Assembly: GCF_044704955.1 (NCBI RefSeq)
Contig: NW_027250770.1
Coordinates: forward strand, 1 to 64,000
DNA length: 64,000 nt
From: Pristiophorus japonicus
Lineage: Eukaryota
Reading direction: 5' to 3'
The translations under genes and the position numbers were made by a program. Positions 1,588-51,839 of the stretch are shown here, in pieces (position 1 is the stretch's first letter; each line of letters begins with the position of its first letter). Under the pieces are notes generated by a model. It worked only from the letters and a program-made list of their open reading frames with translations. It made no database searches and was not told where the DNA came from.

Positions 1588-1633
1588 ATGGGACTTGCCC
1601 CCTGTCTCTGTTTGTTTCTGGCCTGCTTCACCT
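1588..1633 (+). CDS. Ig heavy-chain leader exon (MGLAPCLCLFLACFT)
   Basis: ATG at 1588, hydrophobic signal peptide, 46-nt exon with phase-1 donor T|GTGAGT, in frame with the V exon. Confidence 0.92.
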
Positions 1634-1755
1634 GTGAGTATTCCTCGCTGCTTCCGTGACACAATACAAGGCGGCTTCAGATATTGTGTTTTTATTGCTA
1701 TTCATTGATGTGAATGTTCTCGAAAGTAATTGCAATTTATTTCATTCACTGACAG

Positions 1756-2058
1756 ATGTCCATTCCGAAATCGTGCTGACCCAGTCGGCTTCTGTGTCGA
1801 TGAAGCCCGGAGAATCTCACAAACTATCCTGTTCAGTGAGCGGGTTCGATCCGGACAGCTACTACATGTCCTGGGTTAAACAAGTTCCCGGGAAGGGGCT
1901 GGAGTGGCTGCTTGCTTACTATAAAGCTGGCAGTACCACATATTACGCGCCTGGAGTAGAAGGTCGGATCATCCCTTCAAGTAGATCTTCCACAACCTAC
2001 ATCGAGATCAAGAATCTGAGAACCGAAGACACCGCCATGTATTACTGTGCAAGCCACC
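1756..2058 (+). CDS. Ig heavy-chain V segment, unrearranged, IgW(omega)-like framework
   Basis: Acceptor GACAG| at 1755; (Y)VHS-EIVLTQS...LSC...WVKQVPGKGLEWLL...EDTAMYYCAS with the canonical Cys/Trp/Cys; open frame; directly followed by an RSS. Confidence 0.95.
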
Positions 2059-2096
2059 CACAGCGACCCGACCCGTGTTGGGTTCGTACAGAAACT
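2059..2096 (+). other. V 3' recombination signal sequence (22-bp spacer)
   Basis: CACAGCG (2059-2065) + 22 bp + ACAGAAACT (2088-2096). Confidence 0.92.
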
Positions 2097-2446
2097 GAAT
2101 GAGAGCAATTGCAACAACTTCCATCGAATTCTAGGTCAGTAACGGTGTAAAGTATATCAAGAGATGTGTTTAACCTAGATTGCAAGAATGTATTTGCTAC
2201 AGCAATAAACTGTTTAAGAATAAAATGCACATTAACTAACTTTGTATAGATGAAGATGGTTTATCGTTACTGTGTCCAGGATTAACAACGAGGATTCAAT
2301 GAAAGGTTTAATATTGTAACTATGGGTAGGATTTTGGTCCATTTCTGCGCTCTCAGAAAGAATCATCATTAGACAATCAAAATCTGATAAATCTTTCTGT
2401 TGATTGAGCAATTTATTTCTGCCAGCGTTAATCAGAGAATGAGTCG

Positions 2447-2474
2447 AGTATTTGTGCGGGTCCCTGCCACTGTG
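2447..2474 (-). other. D 5' RSS (12-bp spacer)
   Basis: AGTATTTGT (2447-2455) + 12 bp + CACTGTG (2468-2474). Confidence 0.88.
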
Positions 2475-2497
2475 GTACTACAGCGTACAGTGGGTGG
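2475..2497 (+). CDS. Ig heavy-chain D segment, single, 23 nt (GTACTACAGCGTACAGTGGGTGG)
   Basis: Flanked by two 12-RSSs; all three forward frames open (VLQRTVG / YYSVQWV / TTAYSGW). Confidence 0.88.
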
Positions 2498-2525
2498 CAC
2501 AGCAATTACTGTCAGTACAAAAACC
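2498..2525 (+). other. D 3' RSS (12-bp spacer)
   Basis: CACAGCA + ATTACTGTCAGT (12 bp) + consensus nonamer ACAAAAACC. Confidence 0.92.
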
Positions 2526-2849
2526 CCTCAGCACTAATTGAGTAAGTCTGGGTCAGTGCTCGCTTTCACAATCCACTGTATCTGCAGTGAAGTCCTATTT
2601 ATGTCCAGCACTGTCCTACCAGCACAGTTTAATATGGATAAACTGATCATTATTCATTGATCAGTTGGTAATTTCATGAACTGTTCACGGGTTGCTCTGT
2701 GAAATATATAACACCAGTGCATTTATAAAGAGTGAACAATATCCATTAATACATTTATCATTTTATGAAGATCCATTGTGGTTCTACTTTGTCTCTGGGA
2801 TGTGAATATTTAAACTAATGTTGGATTGCTGTCTGTTTTACGCAGTGCC

Positions 2850-2888
2850 GGTTATTGTGTGACCCAGCCCCGGGAATGTAACACTGTG
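2850..2888 (-). other. J 5' RSS (23-bp spacer)
   Basis: GGTTATTGT (2850-2858) + 23 bp + CACTGTG (2882-2888). Confidence 0.9.
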
Positions 2889-2936
2889 ACGGCATGGGCT
2901 ACTGGGGACAAGGCACCATGGTGACAGTGACAGCAG
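2889..2936 (+). CDS. Ig heavy-chain J segment (GMGYWGQGTMVTVTA), mu-type
   Basis: WGxG motif, phase-1 donor G|GTAAGA. Confidence 0.95.
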
Positions 2937-10730: not shown

Positions 10731-11030
10731 CGACACCATCTGCTCCCAAACTCTATGCCCTGCTCTCCTCCTGTGAACAACCCCACACTGGCGGCCCCGT
10801 CACCTATGGCTGCTTAGCGATGGACTACTCCCCGGAAATCACCAGCCTTTCCTGGAGGACAGAAGAAGCGCCGATCACCACTGGATTGAAGACCTACCCG
10901 TCAGTCCTCAACAAGAAGGGAGCCTACACACTGAGCAGCCAGTTAACCATCAGCAAGTCATTGGTGGGGAGTCGCCCAATCTACTGCGAGGTTCGACGAG
11001 GTGGCTCGGTCTGGGACGTAAAAATGCCAG
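10731..11030 (+). CDS. IGHM: IgM heavy-chain CH1 exon
   Basis: TTCCCAG| acceptor, 300 nt, (A)[16 protein letters not shown]...[17 protein letters not shown]...[25 protein letters not shown]...IYCEVRRG, G|GTGAGT donor; matches recalled shark Cmu1. Confidence 0.95.
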
Positions 11031-12027: not shown

Positions 12028-12339
12028 GTCGTGTGGTACATCATCCAGCTGTTATCCTTACCTTGAGTTCCAAGGAAGAAATCACCAGCAGCAGATCTGC
12101 AACCGCCGTGTGTTCAATCATCGATTTCCGGCCAAAGTCACTGACCGTGAATTGGCTGAAGAATGGACAAATTATGAAATCGGGCTTCATCACCTCTCCC
12201 GTATGTGAGGTGAATGGGAACTTCTCGGCGAGCAGTCGCCTGACATTCTCTGCCGCGGAGTGGTTCGCCCACTCAGTCTATACCTGCCAGGTCTCTCATC
12301 AAGGAATCACCCAAAACCGAACTATCACCAGACCTCCGG
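12028..12339 (+). CDS. IGHM: IgM CH2 exon
   Basis: TTGCAG| acceptor, 312 nt, [42 protein letters not shown]...[10 protein letters not shown]|GTAAGA donor. Confidence 0.95.
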
Positions 12340-14633: not shown

Positions 14634-14939
14634 AAGATTCCTCGTGCAACGATCCAAAAATCACTCTTTTGCCGCCCTCACTCGAGCAGGTCTTAATGGA
14701 GGCGACAGTGACCTTAACCTGCATCGTGTCGAATGCTCCTTTTGGAGTCACCGTGTCCTGGGAGCGGAAAAAGGACATTTTGAAACCAGGGAATCACGGT
14801 GAACCGGGAGAGGGCGACAGTGTGATCAGCAAGTTAGACATCTCGACACAAGACTGGCTGAGTGGGGATGTGTTTGACTGCGTGGCGAGCCATCGGGATA
14901 TGCACACTCCGATCAGAGGTTCCATCCACAAGGAAATGG
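14634..14939 (+). CDS. IGHM: IgM CH3 exon
   Basis: CACAG|AAG acceptor (NAGNAG), 306 nt, [29 protein letters not shown]...[14 protein letters not shown]|GTGAGC donor. Confidence 0.95.
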
Positions 14940-15455: not shown

Positions 15456-15847
15456 CTAACGATCCGCGGGAACCGGCCGTGTCTGTCCTCCTGCCCTCGG
15501 CAGAAGAAATCTCCGCTCAGAGGTTGGTCAGCCTCACCTGCTTAGTGAGAGCTTTCTCCCCGCGAGAGATCTTCGTCAAGTGGACCGTCAATGACAAGCC
15601 GGTGAATTCGGGCAACTACACGAACACCGAGGTGAAGACGGAGAACAGCAGCAGCTCTTTCTTCACGTACAGCCTGTTATCCATTGCAGCCGAGGAGTGG
15701 GCCAGCGGTGCTTCTTACTCCTGTGTGGTAGGACATGAAGCCATCCCCTTGAAGACCATCATCAGAACAGTCAATAAATCCAGCGGTAAACCCAGTTTTG
15801 TGAACATTTCTCTTGGTCTGATGGACACCGTCAATGCTTGTCAATGA
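15456..15847 (+). CDS. IGHM: IgM CH4 exon plus secretory tailpiece
   Basis: TGCAG| acceptor; [27 protein letters not shown]...[13 protein letters not shown]; internal donor G|GTAAA after 15785 for the membrane form; tail [20 protein letters not shown] with an NIS sequon and penultimate Cys. Confidence 0.96.
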
Positions 15848-22615: not shown

Positions 22616-25600
22616 ACATTCACGCAAATAGTATAACTATTGACAATGGGAGTCGATCTGGGGCCCTTATTGTCCTGGTTGATCATCTCGGTGTGAAAGC
22701 TGGTGTAGTTGAATCATTTGTTGGGCCCTCGCTGGGCTGCTGTGCAGCTGGCCTTGCTGGGCTGCCTGGTGTGTTGTCCCCTGCAGGGCTGCTGTGGGTG
22801 ATGGGTTCTGCTTCATGATCAACGTGGTGTCAGTTCCCACTAGTGTGTGTGTTGGTGCATCAAAAAAGGTAGGGTCCAATGTGGGTTGCTCAGGATAGTC
22901 CGTGAATCCGAGTTTGATTTGGTCCAAGTGTTTCCGGTGAATGATTGCATTTGAAAGTTTGACCCGACACACCCTGCTCCCCTCTTTGGCCACGATAGTG
23001 CCGGGAAGCCACTTGGGACCTGGTCCATAATTTAATACAAATACAGGATCATTGAATTCAATCTCGCGTGACACATTTGTGCTGTCATGGTGCGCACTTT
23101 GTTGAAGCCGCCTGCTCTCTACCTGTTCATGTATTTCAGTGTGTACTAACAAGAGCCTTATCTTAAGTGCTCTTTTCATGAGCAGTTCAGCAGGTGGGAT
23201 CCCAGTGAGCGAGCAGGGTCTCGTGCGATAGCTGAGCAGGACTCGGGATAAGCGAGTCTGGGGTGAGCCTTCAGTGACCCTCTTCAAGACTTGCTTGATG
23301 GTTTGCATTGTTCTCTCTGCCTGACCATTGGACGCTGGTTGACACGGCGCAGATTTGACATTCTTGATCCCGTTATGGTTCATGAATTCTTTGAACTCAG
23401 CATTGGGAAAACATGGCCCGTTGTCGTTCAACAGAACATCGGGTAAGCTGTGTGTGGCAAACATGTCCTGCAGGCTTTCAGTGGTGACAGCAGACTTGCT
23501 AGCCGACATTATCTCACATTCAATCCACTTGGAGTATGCGTCTACAACCACAAGGAACATTTTACCAAGCATGGGCCGGCATAGTCGACGTATACCCTAG
23601 ACCACGGTTTGGAGGGCCAAGACCTTAAACATAGAGGCGCCTCCCTGGGTACATTGCTTAACTGCGAGCATGCGTTACATCTGTGAATGCAGGACTCTAA
23701 GTCCGCATCGATACTGTGCCACCACACGTGGGATCTGCCTATCACTTTCATCAGTATGATGCCTGTGCGGGTACTTGGAGGTAATTGATGAAGGTGCCTC
23801 TGCCCTTCTTGGGGACCACTACTCGATTGCCTCACAGCAGGCAGTCTGCCGATATAGACATTTCATCTTTGCGCCACTGGAATGGCTTTATATCTTCCTG
23901 CATTTCCACTGGGACACTGGAACAACTCTCGTGAAGCACACAGCTTTTGACTAAGGATATAAGAGGTCCTGCTTGTCCTGTGATGGGTGATTGCTCACTC
24001 TCAAATGCTTCCATAACCTTGGCTATATCTGCAGGCTGCCCATTTCCACCCCCGTGGTGGGCAATGGCAGCCTACTGAGAGCATCGGCGCAGTTTTCTGT
24101 GCCTGGCCTGTGGCGGATGGCATGGTTGGATGCGGACAACATGAACGGCCATCTCTGGATGCGGGCTGATGCGTTTGTATTTATCCCTTTACTCTCGGAA
24201 AACAGGGGTATAAGTGGCTTATGTTCAGTTTCTAATTCGAATTTTAGCCCAAACAGATATTGATCCATTTTCTTTACCCCACAGACACGCGCTAACACTG
24301 CGTTTCCAGTCATGCTGCAGACAGACTCCGTAGACAGACTCCTGGATGCATAAACCACCGGTTGCAGTTTCCTGAAATCATTAGCTTGTTGCAATACACA
24401 CCCGACACCGTATGACAACGCATCACATGCTCGCACCAAACGTTTACATGGATCATACAACACAGGCAATTTGTTCGAGCATCACAAGTTTCTCGCTTTT
24501 ATAAAGGCACTTTTTTGGATTTTGCCCCAAACCCATTCGCCCCTTTTCTCGTGAGACATGGAGTGCTTCTAGCAGGGTGCTGAGACCCGGTAAGAAGTTA
24601 CCAAAGTAATTCAAGAGTCCCAGGAATGACCGCAGCTCTGCCACGTTCTGTAGTCTCGGTGCGTTCTCGATTGCCTCCGTCTTCGCTTTGATGGGTCTGA
24701 TGTGGTCCGCCGTATTCCTCCTTCCCAAGTAGTCCACTTCAGGCGGCAGGAAAACGCACTTTGAGCATTTTAAGGTGAGCCCCATGCGGTTGAGTCGACT
24801 AAGAACCTCCTCCAGATTCTGCAGCTGCTCGTCTGTGTTCCGACCTGTGTACAAGTTGTCGTCCTGGAAGACCACGGTGTGCGGGACCGACTTCAGTAAA
24901 CTTTGTATGTTTCTCTGGAATATCGTCGCCACCGATCGAATTCCAAACGGGCATCTGTTACAAACAAAAATACTTTTGTGCGTGTTGATGCCGGTGAGAG
25001 CCTTCAATGATTTCTCCAGTTCCTACCTCAAGTAGGCTGAGGTCAGATCCAGCTTCGTGAACGCCTTTCCTCACGCCAGCGCTGCAAAGAGGTCGTCGGC
25101 TTTTGGAAGTGGGTATTGATCCTGCAGGGAGAAACGATTGATAGTTACTTTGTAATCGCCACAGATTCTGACATTGTTGTCTCCCTTGAGGACTGGAACT
25201 CTCTCGCCTTCTATCTCACTCTCGCCTTCTCTCTCTCTCTCTCTGTTTCTCTCTCTCTCTCACTCTCTTGATCGGTGAGATGAGGCCCTCGCTTTGTAGC
25301 TGGTCGAGCTCGATTTCTACCCTTTTCTCTCATCATGTGCAGTACTGCTTTCACCTTGTGATGGATGGGCCGTGCCCCCGGAATTAGGTGGATCTGCACT
25401 TTTGCTCCTTGGTATTTCCCAATGCCTGATTCGAACAGCGAAGGAAATTTGTTTAAGACCTGTGCCCATGGAGTGTCGTCAGCGGGCGATAGCTCTCGGA
25501 TGTCGTCCAAGTTCCAGCGTATCTTTCCCAGCCAGCTCCTGCCGAGCAGCATGGGACCATCGCCCGGTAACAAGCAGAGTGGTAGCTTGTGCACCGCTCC

Positions 25601-26782
25601 ATCGTAGGAGAACTTTATGGTAGCACTGCCTATTACAGGAATCAGTTCTTTCGTGTAAGTTCTTAGTTTCGTGCGAACTGGAGTTTTGACTGGGCTTGAG
25701 GCCTTGTTGCACCACAAAATTTCGAAAGTCTTTTCGCCCATGATGGACTGGCTCACCCATGTGTCCAGCTCCATTGACACCGGGAGTCCATTTAGTTCAA
25801 CAAGTTCAACATTCAGCATTATCGGTGGACAATTCGTGGTGAATGTTTGCACTGCATGTATCTCTGCCTCCTCGGTCTGAGGCTCTGGTTCATCGTGATC
25901 CTCTGTGGATATGTTCTCCTCTGCAACATGGTGGTTTGCAGGTTGAAGAAGTTTTGCAGCTTGCCTGCACACTCGTTGGACATGTCCCATTGTTGCACAG
26001 CCCTTGTAAACGTACTCTTTGAATCGGCATCAATGGAATCGATGACTACCACGTCAGCGCCAACAAGATGTTAATGGCCTTGCCTTCATCATCTTTGATG
26101 ATGGACTTTGAGTCATCTGCGGACGTGCAGCTGCAGGTATGTTTGACCTGCCCTGTACATTATGATTCAAAAACAGCATCAATTTGTTCACAGTACTTGG
26201 AGCAGCACTTGTGTGTTGAGAGATTTGCTTCGTATTGTCACTGATGGCAATGTACGCCTGGGTTATCGCTGTGGCCTTACTCAAGGTTGGGGTCTCTACA
26301 GTCAAAAGTTTGCGAAGTATAGTCTCGTGGCCAATGCCAATTATGTATAAGTCTCCGAGCATATGCTCCAAATGTCCTTCAAATTCGCAATGTCCAGCAA
26401 GGCTTCTTAGCTCGGCGAAATAACACGGCACTTCCTGGCCTTCAGACCTTTTGTAGTTATAGAACCAGTACCTCGCCATCAGAACGCTTTCCTTCGCGTT
26501 CAAATGCTCTCGGACCAGTGTGCACAAATCGTCATACGATTTCTCTGTGGGTTTCGCTGGAGAAAGCAGATTCTTGATGAGGCCATACGTTGGTGCCCCA
26601 CAGACGGTGAGGAGGATCGCCCTTCATTTGGCAGTGCTCTCTTCCCCATTCAGCTCGTTGGCCACGAAGTATTGATCGAGTCGCTCCACAAATGTTTACT
26701 AAACTTCTCCCTCCGAGAATTTCTCCAGGATGCTCACTGTTCTCTGCATCTTTGGGTTCGCTGTTTGTATCTTGCGGCCGGT

Positions 26783-33520: not shown

Positions 33521-36460
33521 AAGAACATAAGAACATAAGAATTAGGAACAGGATTAGGCCATCTAGCCCCTCGAGCCTGCTCCGCCATTCAACAAGATCA
33601 TGGCTGATCTGGCCGTGGACTCAGCTCCAATTACCTGCCCTCGCCCCGTAACCCTTAATTCCCTTATTGGTTAAAAATCTATCTCTCTTTGACTTGGAAA
33701 CATTCAATGAGCTAGCCTCAACTGCTTCCATGGGCAGAGAATTCCACAGATTCACAATCCTCTTGGAGAAGAAATTCCTTCTCAACTCGGTTTTAAATTA
33801 GCTCCTCCGTATTTTGAGGCTGTGCCCCCGAGTTCTAGTCTCCCCCAACAATGGAAACAACCTCTCTGTCTCGATCTTGTCTGTCCATTTCCTGATTTTA
33901 AATATGTCTATAAGATCACCCCTCATCCTTCTGAACTCCAAGGAGTAAAGACTCAGTCTACTCAATCTATCATCATAAGGTAACCCCCTCATCTCCGGAA
34001 TCAGCCTAGTGAATCGTCTCTGTACCCCTCCAAAGCCAGTATATCCTTCCTTAAGTAAGGTGACCAAAACTGCACGCAGTACTCCAGATGCGGCCTCACC
34101 AATACCCTGTACAGTTGCAGCAGGACCTCCCTGCTTTTGTACTCCATCCCTCTCGCAATGAAGGCCAACATTCCATTTGCCTTCCTGATTACCTGCTGCA
34201 CCTGCAAACTAAACTTTTGGGACGGGGCCCGGCGCCTCCCAACTTGAGCCGCCTCGGGGAAATCCCCTCCGTGCCTTTCAGTTCCGCGCGGAGGGGTTTC
34301 CTGTACGGGCTGCTCCTGCACACTCTCAACTTTGCCATCCTCGCCTGCCGTCCGGACACGACATGGCGTACCATCTTGCCGTCCGAAGGAGGCGGGGGTC
34401 CCCGATGGAGGGCACTCTACGCAGGGGTCCTCCCACTATTCATCGGGGACTTGGCCTGGAGGGTGGTGCACGGAGCAGTGCCATGCAACAAATTTTTAAG
34501 CCGGTTCACGGACTCCCAGGCCGCCTGCAATTTCTGCGGTCTGGAGGAGTCCGTGTTCCATGTTTTTATGGAATGCACAAGGTTGCAGCCCCTGTTCCAT
34601 TATTTGAAGGGGCTGCTCCTGAAATTCTGGCTGCACTTCAGTCCCACTCTCCTGATCTTTGGGCACCCTGTGCGGAGGGGAGCGGGTAGGTCCGAGGGCC
34701 TCCTCGTAGGACTGCTCCTGGGCACGGCCAAGGGAGCCATCAGCCGGTCCAGGCAGCGGGCGGTCGAGGGGGTCGTTCAACCTGACTGCCTGCCTCTCTT
34801 CCGCTCTTACATCCGGTCCAGGGTGTCCTTGGAGATGGAGCACGCGGTGTCCACCGGTACGCTCGCGGCCTTCCGCGAGAGGTGGGCACCGGAGGGACTG
34901 GAGTGCATCATCACGCCCAGCAACCAAATTTTAATTTGATTTTACGTTTTAAAGTTTAATTTGTTTTAATTGTCGGTGCTTTTAGTGTCCCCCTCCCCTT
35001 TTATAGGGGGCACTGGAAAAAGGAAAATTTTATTGTAGCGCACAAAAAAAAAACCCAAAAAAAGGAAAAAAAAAAAAAGAGGGCCTTGTCAATGTCTGGT
35101 GTGTCATCCAGGGCAGGTGGCACCGATTAATGTTTTTGTTTTACAGGTAAACTCCAAAAAGAGTTTCATGCACAAGGACCCCCAGGTCCCTCTGCACCAT
35201 AGCATGTTGTAATTTCTCCCCATTCAAATAATATTCCCTTTTACTGTTTTTTTTCCCAAGGTGGATGACCTCATACTTTCCGACATTGTATTCCATCTGC
35301 GAAACCTTAGCCCATTCGCTTAACCGATCCAAATCTCCTTGAAGCCTCTCTGAGTCCTCTACACAACCCGCTTTCCCACTAAGCTTAGTGTCATCTGCAA
35401 ATTTTGTTGCACTGCACTCTGCCCCCTCTTCTAGGTCATCTACGTATATTGTAAACAGTTGTGGTCCCAGCACTGATCCCTGTGGCACACCACTAACCAC
35501 TGATTTCCAACCGGAAAAGGACCCATTTATCCCGACTCTCTGCTTTCTGTTCGCCAACCAATTCTCTATCCATGCTAATACATTTCCTCTGACTCCACGT
35601 ACCTCTATCTCCTGCAGTAACCTTTTGTGTGGCACCTTATCGAATGCCTTTTGGAAATCCAAATACACCACATCCATCGGTACATCTCTATCCACCATGC
35701 TCATTATATCCTCAAAGAATTCCAGTAAATTAGTTAAACATGATTTCCCTTTCATGAATCCATGCTGCGTCTGCTTGATTGCACTATTCCTATCCAGATG
35801 TCCCGCTATTTCTTCCTTAATGATAGTTTCAAGCATTTTCCCCACTACAGATGTTAAACTAAACGGCCTACAATTACCTGTCTTTTGCCTGCCCCCTTTT
35901 TTAAACAGAGGCGTTACATTAGCTGCTCTCCAATCTGCTGGTACCTCCCCAGAGTCCAGAGAATTTTGGTGGATTATAACAAATGCATCTGCTATATCTT
36001 CCACCATCACTTTTAATACCCTGGGATGCATTTCATCAGGACTAGGGGACTTGTCTAACTTGAGTCCCATTAGTCTGCCCAGCACTACCTCCCTCGTGAT
36101 AGTGATCATCTCAAGGTCCTCCCTTCCCAAATTCCTATGACCAGCAATTTTTGGCATGGTTTTTGTGTCTTCCACTGTGAAGACGGAAGCAAAATAATTG
36201 TTTAAGATCTCAGGCATTTCCACATTTCCCATTATTAAATCCCGCTTTTCATCTTCTAAGGGACCAACATTTACTTTAGTCACTCTTTTCAGTTTTACAT
36301 ATCTGTAAAAGCTTTTACTATCTGTTTTTATGTTTTGCGCAAGTTTCCCTTCATAATATATCTTCCCTTTCTTTATTACTTTTTTAGTCATTCTTTGCTT
36401 TTGCTTAAAATTTTCCCAATTCTCTAGTTTCCCACTAACCTTGGCCACCTTATACGCATT
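33521..36460 (-). mobile_element. CR1 LINE (RT domain to 3' tail), interrupted at ~34216-35155
   Basis: ORF 35141-36448 with QHGFMKGKSCLTNLLEFFE, YLDFQKAFDKVPH, SGVPQGSVLGP, KFADDTK; resumes at ~34215 (SLQVQQVIRKANGMLAFI); (AAGAACAT)n tail at 33521. Confidence 0.95.
34216..35160 (+). mobile_element. Tx1-clade (L1 group) LINE 3' end inserted in CR1
   Basis: ORF to 34939 with DLAWRVVHGA and CNFCGLEESVFHVFMEC (RT-associated zinc finger); 3' UTR hairpin and A-rich tracts. Confidence 0.85.
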
Positions 36461-36469
36461 TATATTGTG

Positions 36470-36600
36470 CGGAGGGTTGCTCAGACCCGGGATGATCAGG
36501 ACCTGATTGTGAGGAGCCCCGGTCAGACCCGGGATGATCAGGACCTTATTGTTGGGAGCGTTGCTCAGACCCGGTGTGACCAGGACACAATTGTGGGAGA
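36470..36600. repeat. 3 x ~42-bp tandem repeat
   Basis: tcagacccgggatgatcaggacc recurs at 36481, 36523 and ~36565. Confidence 0.75.
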
Positions 36601-36689
36601 TATGAGGATGTTCCCGATATTCTTGCTAGAATTGTCGCCTGTGGATCTCCCGGCATCGCTGTAAGTCTGGGTATTTTCCAACCTTCGCG

Positions 36690-48887: not shown

Positions 48888-50220
48888 TCGCAGCGCATTT
48901 GGAATGAGGTGACATGATAGGTCCAAGTCAGCATGGATTTGTGAAAGGGAAATCATGCTTGACAAATCTTTTGGAATTTTTTGAGGATGTTTCCAGTAGA
49001 GTGGACAAGGGAGAACCAGTTGATGTGGTATATTTGGACTTTCAGAAGGCTTTCGACAAGGTCCCGCACAAGAGATTAATGTGCAAAGTTAAAGCAGATG
49101 GGATTGGGGGTAGTGTGCTGACATGGATTGAGAACTGGTTGTCAGACAGGAAGCAAAGAGTAGGAGTAAATGGCTACTTTTCAGAATGGCAGGCAGCGAC
49201 TAGTGGATCTGTGCTGTCGTCCCAGCTGTTTACATTGTACATTAATGATTTAGACGAGGGGATTAAATGTAGTATCTCCAAATTTGCGGATGACACTAAG
49301 TTGGGTGGCAGTGTGAACTGCGAGGAGGATGCTATGAGGCTGCAGAGTGACTTGGATAGGTTCGGTGAGCGGGCAAATGCATGGCAGATGAAGTATAATG
49401 TGGATAAATGTGAGGTTATCCACTTTGGTGGTAAAAACAGAGAGACAGACTATTATCTGAATGGTGACAGATTAGGAAAAGGGGAGGTGCAACGAGACCT
49501 GGGTGTCATGGGACATCAGTCATTGAAGGTTGGCATGCAGGTACAGCAGGCGGTTAAGAAAGCAAATGGCATGTTGGCCTTCATTGCAAGGAGATTTGAG
49601 TAAAGGGGCAGGGAGGTATTGCTACAATTGTGCAGGGCCTTGGTGAGGCCACACCTGGAGTATTGTGTACAGTTTTGGTCTCCTAACTTGAGGAAGGACA
49701 TTCTTGCTATTGAGGGAGTGCAGCAAAGGATCACTAGACTGATTCCCGGGATGGCGGGACTGACATATCAAGAAAGACTGGATCAACAGGGCTTGTATTC
49801 AATGGAGTCAGAAGAAAGAGAGGGGATCTCATAGAAATGTTTAACATTCTGACGGGTTTAGACAGGTTAGATGCAGGAAGAATGTTCCCAATGTTGGGGA
49901 AGTCCAGAACCAGGGGTGACAGTCTAAGGATAAGGGGTAAGCCATTTAGGACTGAGATGAGGAGAAACTTCTTCATCCAGAGAGTGGTGAACCTGTGGAA
50001 TTCTCTACCACAGAAAGTTGTTGAGGCCAATTCACTAAATATATTCAAAAAGGAGTTAAATATAGACCTTACTACTAGGGGGATCAAGGGGTATGGCGAG
50101 AAAGCAGGAATGGGGTACTGAAGGTGTATGTTCAACCATGAACTCATTGAATGGCGGTGCAGGCTAGAAGGGCCGAATGGCCTACTCCTGCACCTATTTT
50201 CTATATTTTCTATGTTTCTA
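48888..50220 (+). mobile_element. CR1 LINE RT domain to 3' tail
   Basis: SQHGFVKGKSCLTNLLEFFE, KFADDTK; (TTTCTATG)-type tail. Confidence 0.95.
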
Positions 50221-50764: not shown

Positions 50765-50937
50765 TTACATAAGCATTTGGCGGCTCATTGACTGAGGGAT
50801 GGGTCGTCTGATTTAATGCTGATAAATGAATTTAGTTGGTGATTACCTTGTCAATGATTGCTAATTATTTTAGTTTGGAGTCTATTCTTTTCTCGAAATT
50901 AATGTTTAACTTACCTGTTTATTTCCCTGCCTGACAG

Positions 50938-51839
50938 TTAACATCCTGACGATTGTGATCCTGCCTCGTGGAAAGTGCGGTCTCTCCAGATGTGTCACTC
51001 GCTATCTGGTGGCCATGGCAGCGACGGATCTCCTGGTCATTATCCTCGACCTGATACTGAGGCACATTCCCATTCTTTATCAGAAAGAGTTCCATTTCGT
51101 GTATTCCTTCCCCGTGTGTAATATTCACGCCGTCTTACTTCACGCAGCCACAGACTGTTCTGTCTGGTTCACTGTCAGTTTCACCTTTGATCGCTTTGTG
51201 GCCATTTGTTGCCAGAAGCTGAAAACTAAATATTGCACCGAGAGAACGGCGGCTGTGGTTCTGGGAACCGTGACTTTGCTGAGCGGGTTGAAGAACATTT
51301 TCTGGTATTTTATGTTGACAAGTTTCTATAATCTTTCAAACATGCCCTGGTTTTGCTATATAACAATTGATGTTCTGAATTCACCGGTCTGGACAGCAAT
51401 CACATTCCTTCATTATATTCTCACCCCATGTGTCCCATTTGCTCTGATTCTGCTGCTCAATGCTGTCACCGCCAGACATATTATATTGGCCAGCAGAGCC
51501 CGCAGGCAACTCCGGGGTGCCAGCAGTGGGGAGTGTCCCAGTGACCCTGAGATGGACAGCCGCAGGAATTCCATCATTTTACTGTTTGTTATCTCCGGCA
51601 ATTTCATCCTGTTGTGGGCGGTGTTTATGGTGCATTCTATATGGATCCAGATGTACTATTTGGGCTATGATTCTGTATATATACCTTTTTATTTAATGGA
51701 CATTGGATTCATGCTGCAGCTGCTGAGTTGCTGCACAAACATGGCAATTTATGCCGTGACCCAGACTAAGTTCAGACAACAGTTGAAGAATGTAGGGAAA
51801 TATCCCTTCACACTGATTCTGAAATTAATTAAACGATGA
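50938..51839 (+). CDS. GPR139-like class A GPCR, exon 2 (end of TM1 to TM7 and stop); spliced product 360 aa
   Basis: GACAG| acceptor, (V)NILTIVILPRGKCGLSRCVTRYLVAMAATDLLV, TFDRFVAIC (DRY variant), CCTNMAIY (NPxxY variant); six further hydrophobic helices; intact ORF. Matches my recollection of a GPR139-like family expanded in sharks; probably not the true GPR139 ortholog. Confidence 0.9.

What the first reader, a model, noticed from the sequence alone, without database searches (positions are those of the whole stretch)
2447..2525. Single long 12/12 D may be a germline D-D join and the chimera breakpoint
Seen: I find only one D between V and J (V-D and D-J spacings ~350 and ~325 bp). It is 23 nt, flanked by 12-RSS on both sides, and reads GTAC-TACAGCG-TACAGTG-GGTGG with an internal 7-bp near-duplication. 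Established: typical shark IgM clusters have D1 (12/22-23) plus D2 (12/12), each shorter, and germline-joined segments occur in sharks. Inference: this D is the 5' part of a D1 fused to the 3' part of a D2 by RAG in the germline. If the D1 side came from an IgW cluster and the D2 side from an IgM cluster, one RAG-mediated inter-cluster join would explain both the single D and the omega-V/mu-C chimera, while leaving a gene that still obeys the 12/23 rule (V22-12D12-23J).
Basis: partly seen in the sequence, partly recalled or inferred. Interest (0 to 1): 0.8.

Follow-up and report, generated by a model that had tools for sequence, protein, structure and literature searches.

The report
Pre-joined D-D segment in shark IgM cluster
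One copy of a multi-copy shark antibody (IgM) gene cluster has its two D pieces already fused into one, most likely cut and joined in inherited DNA by the antibody recombinase; this is a further form of a habit long known in sharks, and the fusion is not where the cluster's unusual V gene was attached.

Summary
Between V (22-spacer signal) and J (23-spacer signal) there is one 23-nt D (2475-2497) with 12-spacer signals on both sides and no other credible signal.

The first half of the reading, a D1-D2 join, is supported. In DNA contigs of the same species, high-depth contigs match the window at about 99% on each side of position 2485 and diverge exactly there. One runs on from 2485 into GGGT plus a heptamer, an unfused D1. 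The other has its own 12-spacer signal directly before 2485-2497, an unfused D2. The window's D therefore equals D1 minus 4-5 nt plus D2 minus 0-1 nt, with no added bases. Both inner signals are gone from the whole window. This is the signature of a RAG coding joint.

The second half, that the join is the IgW-V/IgM-C chimera breakpoint, is not supported. The unfused copies already carry the same V-type flank and the same D2-J flank at equal depth, and RNA links that V flank to this J flank.

I could not confirm the window's own junction in independent reads, so germline status is inferred. Earlier notes of this scan record the same hybrid cluster type, and one other single 12/12 D, elsewhere in this genome. 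Verdict: a modest new variant of a known kind.

The parts
1588..1633 (+). Leader exon 1 (ATG at 1588)
   Evidence: Sequence. The leader intron 1634-1755 is spliced out GT..AG in run X5 (table 5).
1756..2058 (+). V exon, IgW-family (omega-type) VH
   Evidence: Pfam V-set, E 8e-15. Best hits are a Scyliorhinus torazame V at 85% and horn shark IgW V region W26 at 68%. Conventional IgM V contigs of the same species diverge from it upstream of 2010 (table 7).
2059..2096 (+). V recombination signal, 22-nt spacer
   Evidence: The catshark relative P0001 reads through the same number of codons to the same nonamer region.
2447..2474 (-). 5' signal of D, 12-nt spacer (the D1 signal)
   Evidence: Its spacer differs from that of the D2 5' signal seen in the unfused contigs.
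2475..2485 (+). D1-derived part of the fused D (the G at 2485 could come from either parent)
   Evidence: A contig matches the window up to 2485, then continues GGGT plus heptamer CACGGTG (table 7, '2485 behind').
2485..2497 (+). D2-derived part of the fused D
   Evidence: X2 record 15 (667 nt, depth 135) matches 2485-2932 with 4 mismatches. It is preceded by 219 unlike letters that end in nonamer, 12-nt spacer, CACTGTG (tables 7 and 8).
2498..2525 (+). 3' signal of D, 12-nt spacer (the D2 signal)
   Evidence: It is contiguous with D2 in the unfused contig.
2850..2888 (-). J recombination signal, 23-nt spacer
2889..2936 (+). J segment (GMGYWGQGTMVTVTA), mu-type
   Evidence: Translation. It is spliced at 2936 to C-mu1 in X5.
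10731..11030 (+). C-mu1 exon
   Evidence: Pfam C1-set. The RNA loose end equals 10731-10760. Splice sites checked.
12028..12339 (+). C-mu2 exon
14634..14939 (+). C-mu3 exon
15456..15847 (+). C-mu4 exon with secretory tailpiece and stop codon
   Evidence: It aligns end to end with solved IgM C-mu4 plus tailpiece.

Best explanation
The window holds an intact, unrearranged shark IgM heavy-chain cluster of a multi-copy family. Members of this family carry an IgW-family V, two D segments (D1 and D2), a mu-type J with a 23-spacer signal, and C-mu1-4.

In this copy, D1 and D2 have been joined by a V(D)J-type (RAG) reaction. The 3' signal of D1, the 5' 12-spacer signal of D2 and the DNA between them were excised. 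Five nucleotides in all were trimmed from the two coding ends and nothing was added. What remains is one 23-nt D that keeps D1's 5' 12-signal and D2's 3' 12-signal.

The result is a V-DD-J cluster. It still obeys the 12/23 rule but needs two joins instead of three, and it has a fixed D-D core in CDR3.

Shown: the layout, and the existence of unfused D1 and D2 with near-identical flanks.
Inferred: that RAG did it, and that it happened in the germline rather than in a lymphocyte.

The join occurred inside the already hybrid cluster family and did not create the hybrid.
For: - Layout and signals.
- one contig matches the window up to 2485, then reads GGGT, CACGGTG and onward. This is unfused D1 with its heptamer.
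- X2 record 15 (depth 135) has 219 unlike letters ending in AGTATTTGG, a 12-nt spacer and CACTGTG. It then matches 2485-2932 with 4 mismatches. This is unfused D2 with its 12-signal.
- Both breaks fall at the same base, within 5 nt of one heptamer border and 0-1 nt of the other, as expected of trimmed coding ends.
- The excised flank motifs are absent from the whole 64 kb.
- The absence of N bases matches the germline joins of nurse shark NS4 light-chain genes, which show little sign of TdT, whereas somatic joins carry N regions (PMC2193156).
- The V/signal variant specific to this copy (2024-2134, 0 mismatches) is present unrearranged in a second sample, X5 record 29. The locus is therefore a real paralog.
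- V, J and the C-mu exons are intact.
- Earlier scan notes report VDJ, V-DJ and VD-DJ germline joins, and several two-D copies of this hybrid cluster type, in the same genome. These are leads and were not checked here.
Against: - No contig shown carries the window's own junction.
- At 2515 all three X1 contigs read A where the window reads G. The fused copy is therefore not independently confirmed in runs X1-X3. Logan contigs drop rare variants next to deep paralogs, so this does not show that it is absent.
- The tissue used for the assembly is unknown to me, and V-DD-J is a known somatic intermediate in shark lymphocytes and thymocytes (PMC2435157).
- Only the heptamer and 19 nt of the D1 3' signal are visible, so its 22/23 spacer is not shown.
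- Contigs are short and the family has many copies, so linkage of V, D1, D2 and J in the unfused copies rests on equal depth and overlaps, not on one spanning record.
Confidence: 0.72

Rival explanations
1. The D-D join is somatic or an assembly artefact. A partial V-DD-J rearrangement from a lymphocyte or thymocyte, or a mis-collapse among about 10 near-identical clusters, entered the consensus, while the inherited locus has D1 and D2 apart.
For: V-DD-J is a frequent one-step intermediate in nurse shark thymocytes and occurs in B cells (PMC2435157). No independent contig with the window's junction or its G at 2515 was seen in X1-X3. The family has many copies, with depth about 116-178 against about 8-18 for apparently unique contigs.
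Against: - A consensus assembly needs a majority of reads at a locus, and one lymphocyte clone cannot supply that.
- The junction has no N bases, unlike typical somatic shark joins.
- A mis-collapse would break at shared sequence such as CACTGTGGTAC. It would not leave D1 letters followed by a full D2.
- The scan noted another single 12/12 D cluster on another piece of this genome (unchecked).
- A contig of single-copy depth spans the D region in one piece in X1 and X3 (record 2).
Confidence: 0.12
2. The single D arose without RAG. Either an ordinary deletion (end joining or slippage) removed the D1-D2 interval, or a 16-nt single D gained a 7-bp tandem duplication (TACAGCG/TACAGTG).
For: The two 7-mers differ at one base, and there is 1 nt of overlap (G at 2485) at the junction. 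The diverged contig record 2 has about 7 unexplained gap letters near the D.
Against: - A random deletion of a few hundred bp would rarely have both ends within 5 nt of the two heptamer borders and remove exactly both inner signals.
- The duplication idea does not explain why two deep contigs leave the window at the very same base with a heptamer next to it on each side.
Confidence: 0.06
3. One reading: one RAG join between the D1 of an IgW cluster and the D2 of an IgM cluster produced both the single D and the IgW-V/IgM-C chimera.
For: - V is IgW-family, while J and C are mu-type.
- The fused D sits between them.
- My own data link V and J of the unfused copies only through equal depth and a 13-nt splice overhang.
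Against: - The V-D1 flank (depth 116-124) and the D2-J flank (depth 117-151) occur at equal multi-copy depth.
- All the laid depth at 2491-2539 in X2 is the unfused contig.
- The main-family V-flank variant (X5 record 30) splices to this J flank.
- Depth and unitig breaks change at 2345-2391, not in D.
- Earlier follow-up reports of this scan describe several copies with IgW-type V, D-D-J and C-mu (not checked here).
- Rearrangement between clusters is reported as exceptional (PMC2435157; PMC5192425).
Confidence: 0.04

Closest known systems
Nurse shark IgNAR type III cluster (germline-fused D1-D2)
   Same: Two neighbouring D segments are fused in inherited DNA while V and J stay separate. One rearrangement step fewer is needed and CDR3 diversity is restricted (PMC4622739).
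   Different: A different isotype (IgNAR, three Ds) and species. Here it is an IgM cluster with two Ds, and the fused copy sits among many unfused, about 99% identical copies. Nothing is known about its stage of expression.
Partly or fully germline-joined IgM clusters of horn shark and skates (VD-J, VD-DJ, VDJ)
   Same: The same phenomenon: V(D)J-type joins fixed in the germline of cartilaginous fish IgH miniclusters (PMC5192425, PMC4279169, PMC2193156).
   Different: The reviews I read list VD-J, VD-DJ and VDJ, not V-DD-J. For the classical H-chain cases the joins could not be dissected, because joined and split genes were too different (PMC2193156). Here the parental ends can be read.
Nurse shark NS4 light-chain genes, joined and split copies up to 99% identical
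   Same: A recent germline join with close split relatives, complete removal of the signals, trimmed ends and little or no N addition (PMC2193156).
   Different: That case is a V-J join of a light chain.
Somatic V-DD-J intermediates in nurse shark lymphocytes and thymocytes
   Same: An identical configuration, produced by a legitimate 12/23 join of D1 to D2 (PMC2435157).
   Different: Those occur in single cells and usually carry N or P bases. This one is in a genome assembly and has none.

Membership tests
Cartilaginous-fish IgM heavy-chain minicluster | One V, D segment(s) and one J within about 1.5 kb, same orientation, followed by C-mu1-4 with a secretory tailpiece | tested here: met
   Spacings of about 400 bp match those of nurse shark clusters (PMC2435157).
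Cartilaginous-fish IgM heavy-chain minicluster | V gene of the conventional IgM VH family | tested here: not met
   V is closest to the catshark V P0001 (85%) and horn shark IgW V W26 (68%). Conventional V contigs of this species diverge in FR3 (table 7).
Germline-joined (RAG-made) Ig gene segments of cartilaginous fish | Close relatives exist in which the joined segments are separate, each with its own signal | tested here: met
   unfused D1 (GGGT plus CACGGTG after 2485) and unfused D2 (12-signal before 2485), with flanks about 99% identical to the window.
Germline-joined (RAG-made) Ig gene segments of cartilaginous fish | Both inner signals and the intervening DNA removed exactly; junction made of trimmed coding ends | tested here: met
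   Junction at 2484/2485: 5 nt lost in total, no added bases. The flank motifs are absent from the window.
Germline-joined (RAG-made) Ig gene segments of cartilaginous fish | The two signals used form a 12/23 pair | tested here: inconclusive
   The D2 5' signal has a 12-nt spacer. Only the heptamer and 19 nt of the D1 3' signal are visible. A 22-nt spacer is expected from scan notes on other clusters, but I did not see it.
Germline-joined (RAG-made) Ig gene segments of cartilaginous fish | Present in non-lymphoid or germ-cell DNA and inherited | not testable with these tools
Inter-cluster (IgW x IgM) recombination junction | Sequence left of the junction is otherwise found only in IgW clusters, and sequence right of it only in IgM clusters with a mu V | tested here: not met
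   Both flanks occur at equal depth in the unfused multi-copy form, and RNA links the main-family V flank to this J flank. The test is indirect, because no spanning record exists.

The most novel reading that the evidence does not exclude
This is a recent germline RAG event in a heavy-chain cluster, caught next to its unfused parents. The flanks are about 99% identical, the join follows the 12/23 rule, 5 nt were trimmed and no N bases were added. It would be the first IgM V-DD-J germline form whose junction can be read base by base. It may still be polymorphic in the species, since it was not seen in the contigs of sample S1. That would make germline RAG activity in a living shark lineage directly testable.
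Probability: 0.45. Interest if true: 0.45.

Novelty: new variant of a known kind. Interest (0 to 1): 0.33.

Why it matters
Germline joining of antibody gene segments is a peculiarity of cartilaginous fish. It is taken as evidence that the RAG recombinase acts in germ cells and reshapes antigen-receptor loci.

For heavy chains the joins have been hard to dissect, because joined and split genes were too diverged (PMC2193156). Here the fused D can be compared with near-identical unfused copies, so the ends, the trimming and the lack of added bases are readable.

The finding also adds the V-DD-J form to the VDJ, V-DJ and VD-DJ forms already noted in this genome. Functionally it gives a cluster that needs two joins and has a longer, partly fixed CDR3 core.

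It does not explain how the IgW-family V came to sit on an IgM cluster.

Tried and rejected
- The search of earlier findings by sequence gave nothing.
- I looked for a hidden second D with a relaxed signal scan and found none.
- I looked for the excised D1 3' and D2 5' flank motifs elsewhere in the window, as a sign of reinsertion, and found none.
- Literature searches for a germline V-DD-J IgM cluster found only the somatic intermediate.
- Unequal crossing-over between the two similar D 5' signals was considered and rejected. It would leave a plain D2, not D1 letters followed by D2.
- The bacterial, viral and metagenome collections were not scanned, because they cannot hold shark clusters.

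Full report
**What is there**

The first 16 kb of the window is a complete, unrearranged shark-type immunoglobulin heavy-chain cluster on the + strand.
- Leader exon 1588-1633.
- V exon 1756-2058, followed by CACAGCG, a 22-nt spacer and ACAGAAACT (2059-2096).
- One D at 2475-2497 (23 nt). Before it lie AGTATTTGT, a 12-nt spacer and CACTGTG (2447-2474). After it lie CACAGCA, a 12-nt spacer and ACAAAAACC (2498-2525).
- J signal: GGTTATTGT, a 23-nt spacer and CACTGTG (2850-2888). J is 2889-2936 and reads GMGYWGQGTMVTVTA.
- Four C1-set exons with good splice sites follow at 10731-11030, 12028-12339, 14634-14939 and 15456-15847.
- The last exon, with its tailpiece, aligns end to end with solved IgM C-mu4 chains.

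D is open in its three forward frames.

**V type**

The V exon is 85% identical to a Scyliorhinus torazame V and 68% identical to horn shark IgW V region W26. No conventional shark IgM V appeared among the hits.

In the laid contigs, conventional V genes of the same species leave the window upstream of 2010 with a different FR3 (table 7). The V is therefore of the IgW family, while J and C are mu-type. By contrast, the IgW W26 entry ends in a different J.

The catshark protein reads through the same number of codons to the same nonamer region. The 22-spacer V signal is therefore conserved.

**The key test**

One call each of the look-up of sequencing runs and read laying was allowed. Runs X1-X3 are DNA contigs of one sample of the same species. 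X5 belongs to another sample and study and behaves as RNA: the leader intron is spliced, and J is spliced to C-mu1, its loose end being window 10731-10760 exactly.

At 80% likeness, the deep contigs (depth about 116-178, against 8-18 for apparently unique contigs) follow the window closely.
- 1560-2391: 28 mismatches, mostly in V.
- 2127-2391: 2 mismatches.
- 2485-2932: 4 mismatches.

They leave the window at one and the same base, 2485.
- One contig matches up to 2485 and continues GGGT, CACGGTG, CTGTACACGGCGAGCGCCT. That is the rest of a D1 followed by a heptamer.
- X2 record 15 (667 nt, depth 135) begins with 219 letters unlike the window. These end in AGTATTTGG, a 12-nt spacer (CACGGCGTGTCT) and CACTGTG. 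The record then matches 2485-2932. That is a D2 of 13 nt with its own 5' 12-signal, followed by the window's 3' 12-signal, D-J spacer and J.

The window's 5' signal has a different spacer from this D2 signal, so it is the D1 signal.

The window's D therefore equals D1 without its last 4-5 nt plus D2 without 0-1 nt; the G at 2485 could come from either. Nothing was added. The near-repeat TACAGCG/TACAGTG exists because D1 and D2 resemble each other. The two excised flank motifs occur nowhere in the 64 kb.

**Mechanism**

Four features point to a RAG-type coding joint and not an ordinary deletion:
- Both ends of the missing interval lie within 5 nt of a heptamer border.
- Both inner signals are removed entirely.
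- The outer signals are intact.
- The product still obeys the 12/23 rule.

The same criteria were used for the germline-joined NS4 light-chain genes of the nurse shark. Those joins also show trimming and little sign of TdT, while somatic joins carry N stretches (PMC2193156).

The 12-nt spacer of the D2 signal is shown. The 22/23 spacer of the D1 3' signal is not visible in the 30 letters returned.

**Germline or somatic**

This step is inferred. V-DD-J is a common somatic intermediate in nurse shark thymocytes and also occurs in B cells (PMC2435157). I also saw no contig with the window's own junction: at 2515 all X1 contigs read A where the window reads G. Logan contigs drop rare variants beside deep paralogs, so this is not evidence that the junction is absent.

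In favour of an inherited join:
- A consensus assembly cannot be built from one lymphocyte clone.
- The join has no N bases.
- This copy's private V/signal variant (2024-2134, 0 mismatches) is present, unrearranged, in the second sample (X5 record 29).
- A contig of single-copy depth spans 2166-2539 in one piece (X1 record 2).
- The scan noted another single 12/12 D on another piece of the genome (unchecked).

**The chimera-breakpoint idea**

The unfused form already has the omega-type V and V-D1 flank and the same D2-J flank at equal multi-copy depth. In X2, all the laid depth at 2491-2539 is the unfused contig.

In RNA, the main-family V-flank variant (record 30) is spliced to this J flank. 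A J contig (record 32) joins 15 nt of V flank, the J signal plus J, and 128 nt of C-mu1. Earlier follow-up reports of this scan describe several copies with IgW-type V, D-D-J and C-mu in the same genome and say the type also occurs in catsharks. I used these as leads only.

The D-D join therefore happened inside a standing hybrid cluster family. All V contigs end at 2391, and depth roughly triples in 2392-2441. The last 100 bp or so before D1 is thus shared with other cluster families. If there is a family boundary, it lies there, not in D. This is suggestive only.

**Comparison with what is known**

- Germline fusion of D1 and D2 is known for the nurse shark IgNAR type III cluster (PMC4622739).
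- Germline IgM forms are listed as VD-J, VD-DJ and VDJ (PMC5192425, PMC4279169).
- I found no paper describing a germline V-DD-J IgM cluster. The searchable library misses most subscription journals.

This is therefore a further configuration of a known process, with the useful property that its parental ends can be read.

**Limits**

- The proposed spacer alignments against IgW and IgM clusters could not be done.
- Linkage within the unfused copies rests on depth and overlaps of short contigs.

Noticed in passing
window 2134/2135 and 2845/2846: RNA contigs of X5 join 2134 to 2846. They use a cryptic donor (AG|GTCAGT) just after the V signal and an acceptor (TTTTACGCAG|) just before the J nonamer, then splice J to C-mu1. 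This is a sterile transcript of the unrearranged cluster that removes the whole D region. It is seen for both the window-type and the main-family V-flank variants (records 29, 30, 32).
   Followed up: partly
window 2053 to 2903 (joint in run X2): A DNA-run contig (depth 6.45) joins the V end to J with 28 other letters between. It is either a germline-joined VDJ copy of this V family or a lymphocyte clone in the sequenced tissue. It is seen in X2 only (tables 5 and 5c).
   Followed up: no
window 2166-2539: A contig of single-copy depth (X1/X3 record 2, 375 nt, 37 mismatches, 15 gap letters; part of it also in X5) covers the V-D spacer, D and both signals in one piece. It may be a second, roughly 10% diverged single-D cluster. 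Its D letters were not shown.
   Followed up: no
window 2345-2441: All V-side contigs end at 2391 in three runs, and summed depth rises from about 120 to about 370. The 100 bp upstream of the D1 signal is therefore shared with other cluster families, which makes it a candidate boundary of the IgW-like part.
   Followed up: no
window 1602-2114: This copy differs from the deep family consensus at 28 places between 1560 and 2391, against 2 in 2127-2391 and 4 in 2485-2932. Many are adjacent pairs or triplets in CDR1 and CDR2 (1848-1852, 1869-1870, 1928-1930). This fits germline V diversification or gene conversion among the copies.
   Followed up: no
window 2935/2936 (loose ends in X5): J-like contigs splice to two different C-mu1 starts. 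One is identical to this window; the other starts differently and presumably belongs to the conventional IgM clusters.
   Followed up: no
window 50910-51836 (+): An intron-less open frame of 309 codons with a rhodopsin-family 7TM match (Pfam 7tm_1, E 1e-15). This is a GPCR gene or pseudogene about 35 kb downstream of the cluster.
   Followed up: partly
window 22670-26623 (-), 35144-36625 (-), 48908-49600 (+): Retroelement remains: integrase core and reverse transcriptase domains. Beyond them lie long simple-repeat tracts with masked N runs at 53-58 kb and 63.5 kb.
   Followed up: partly
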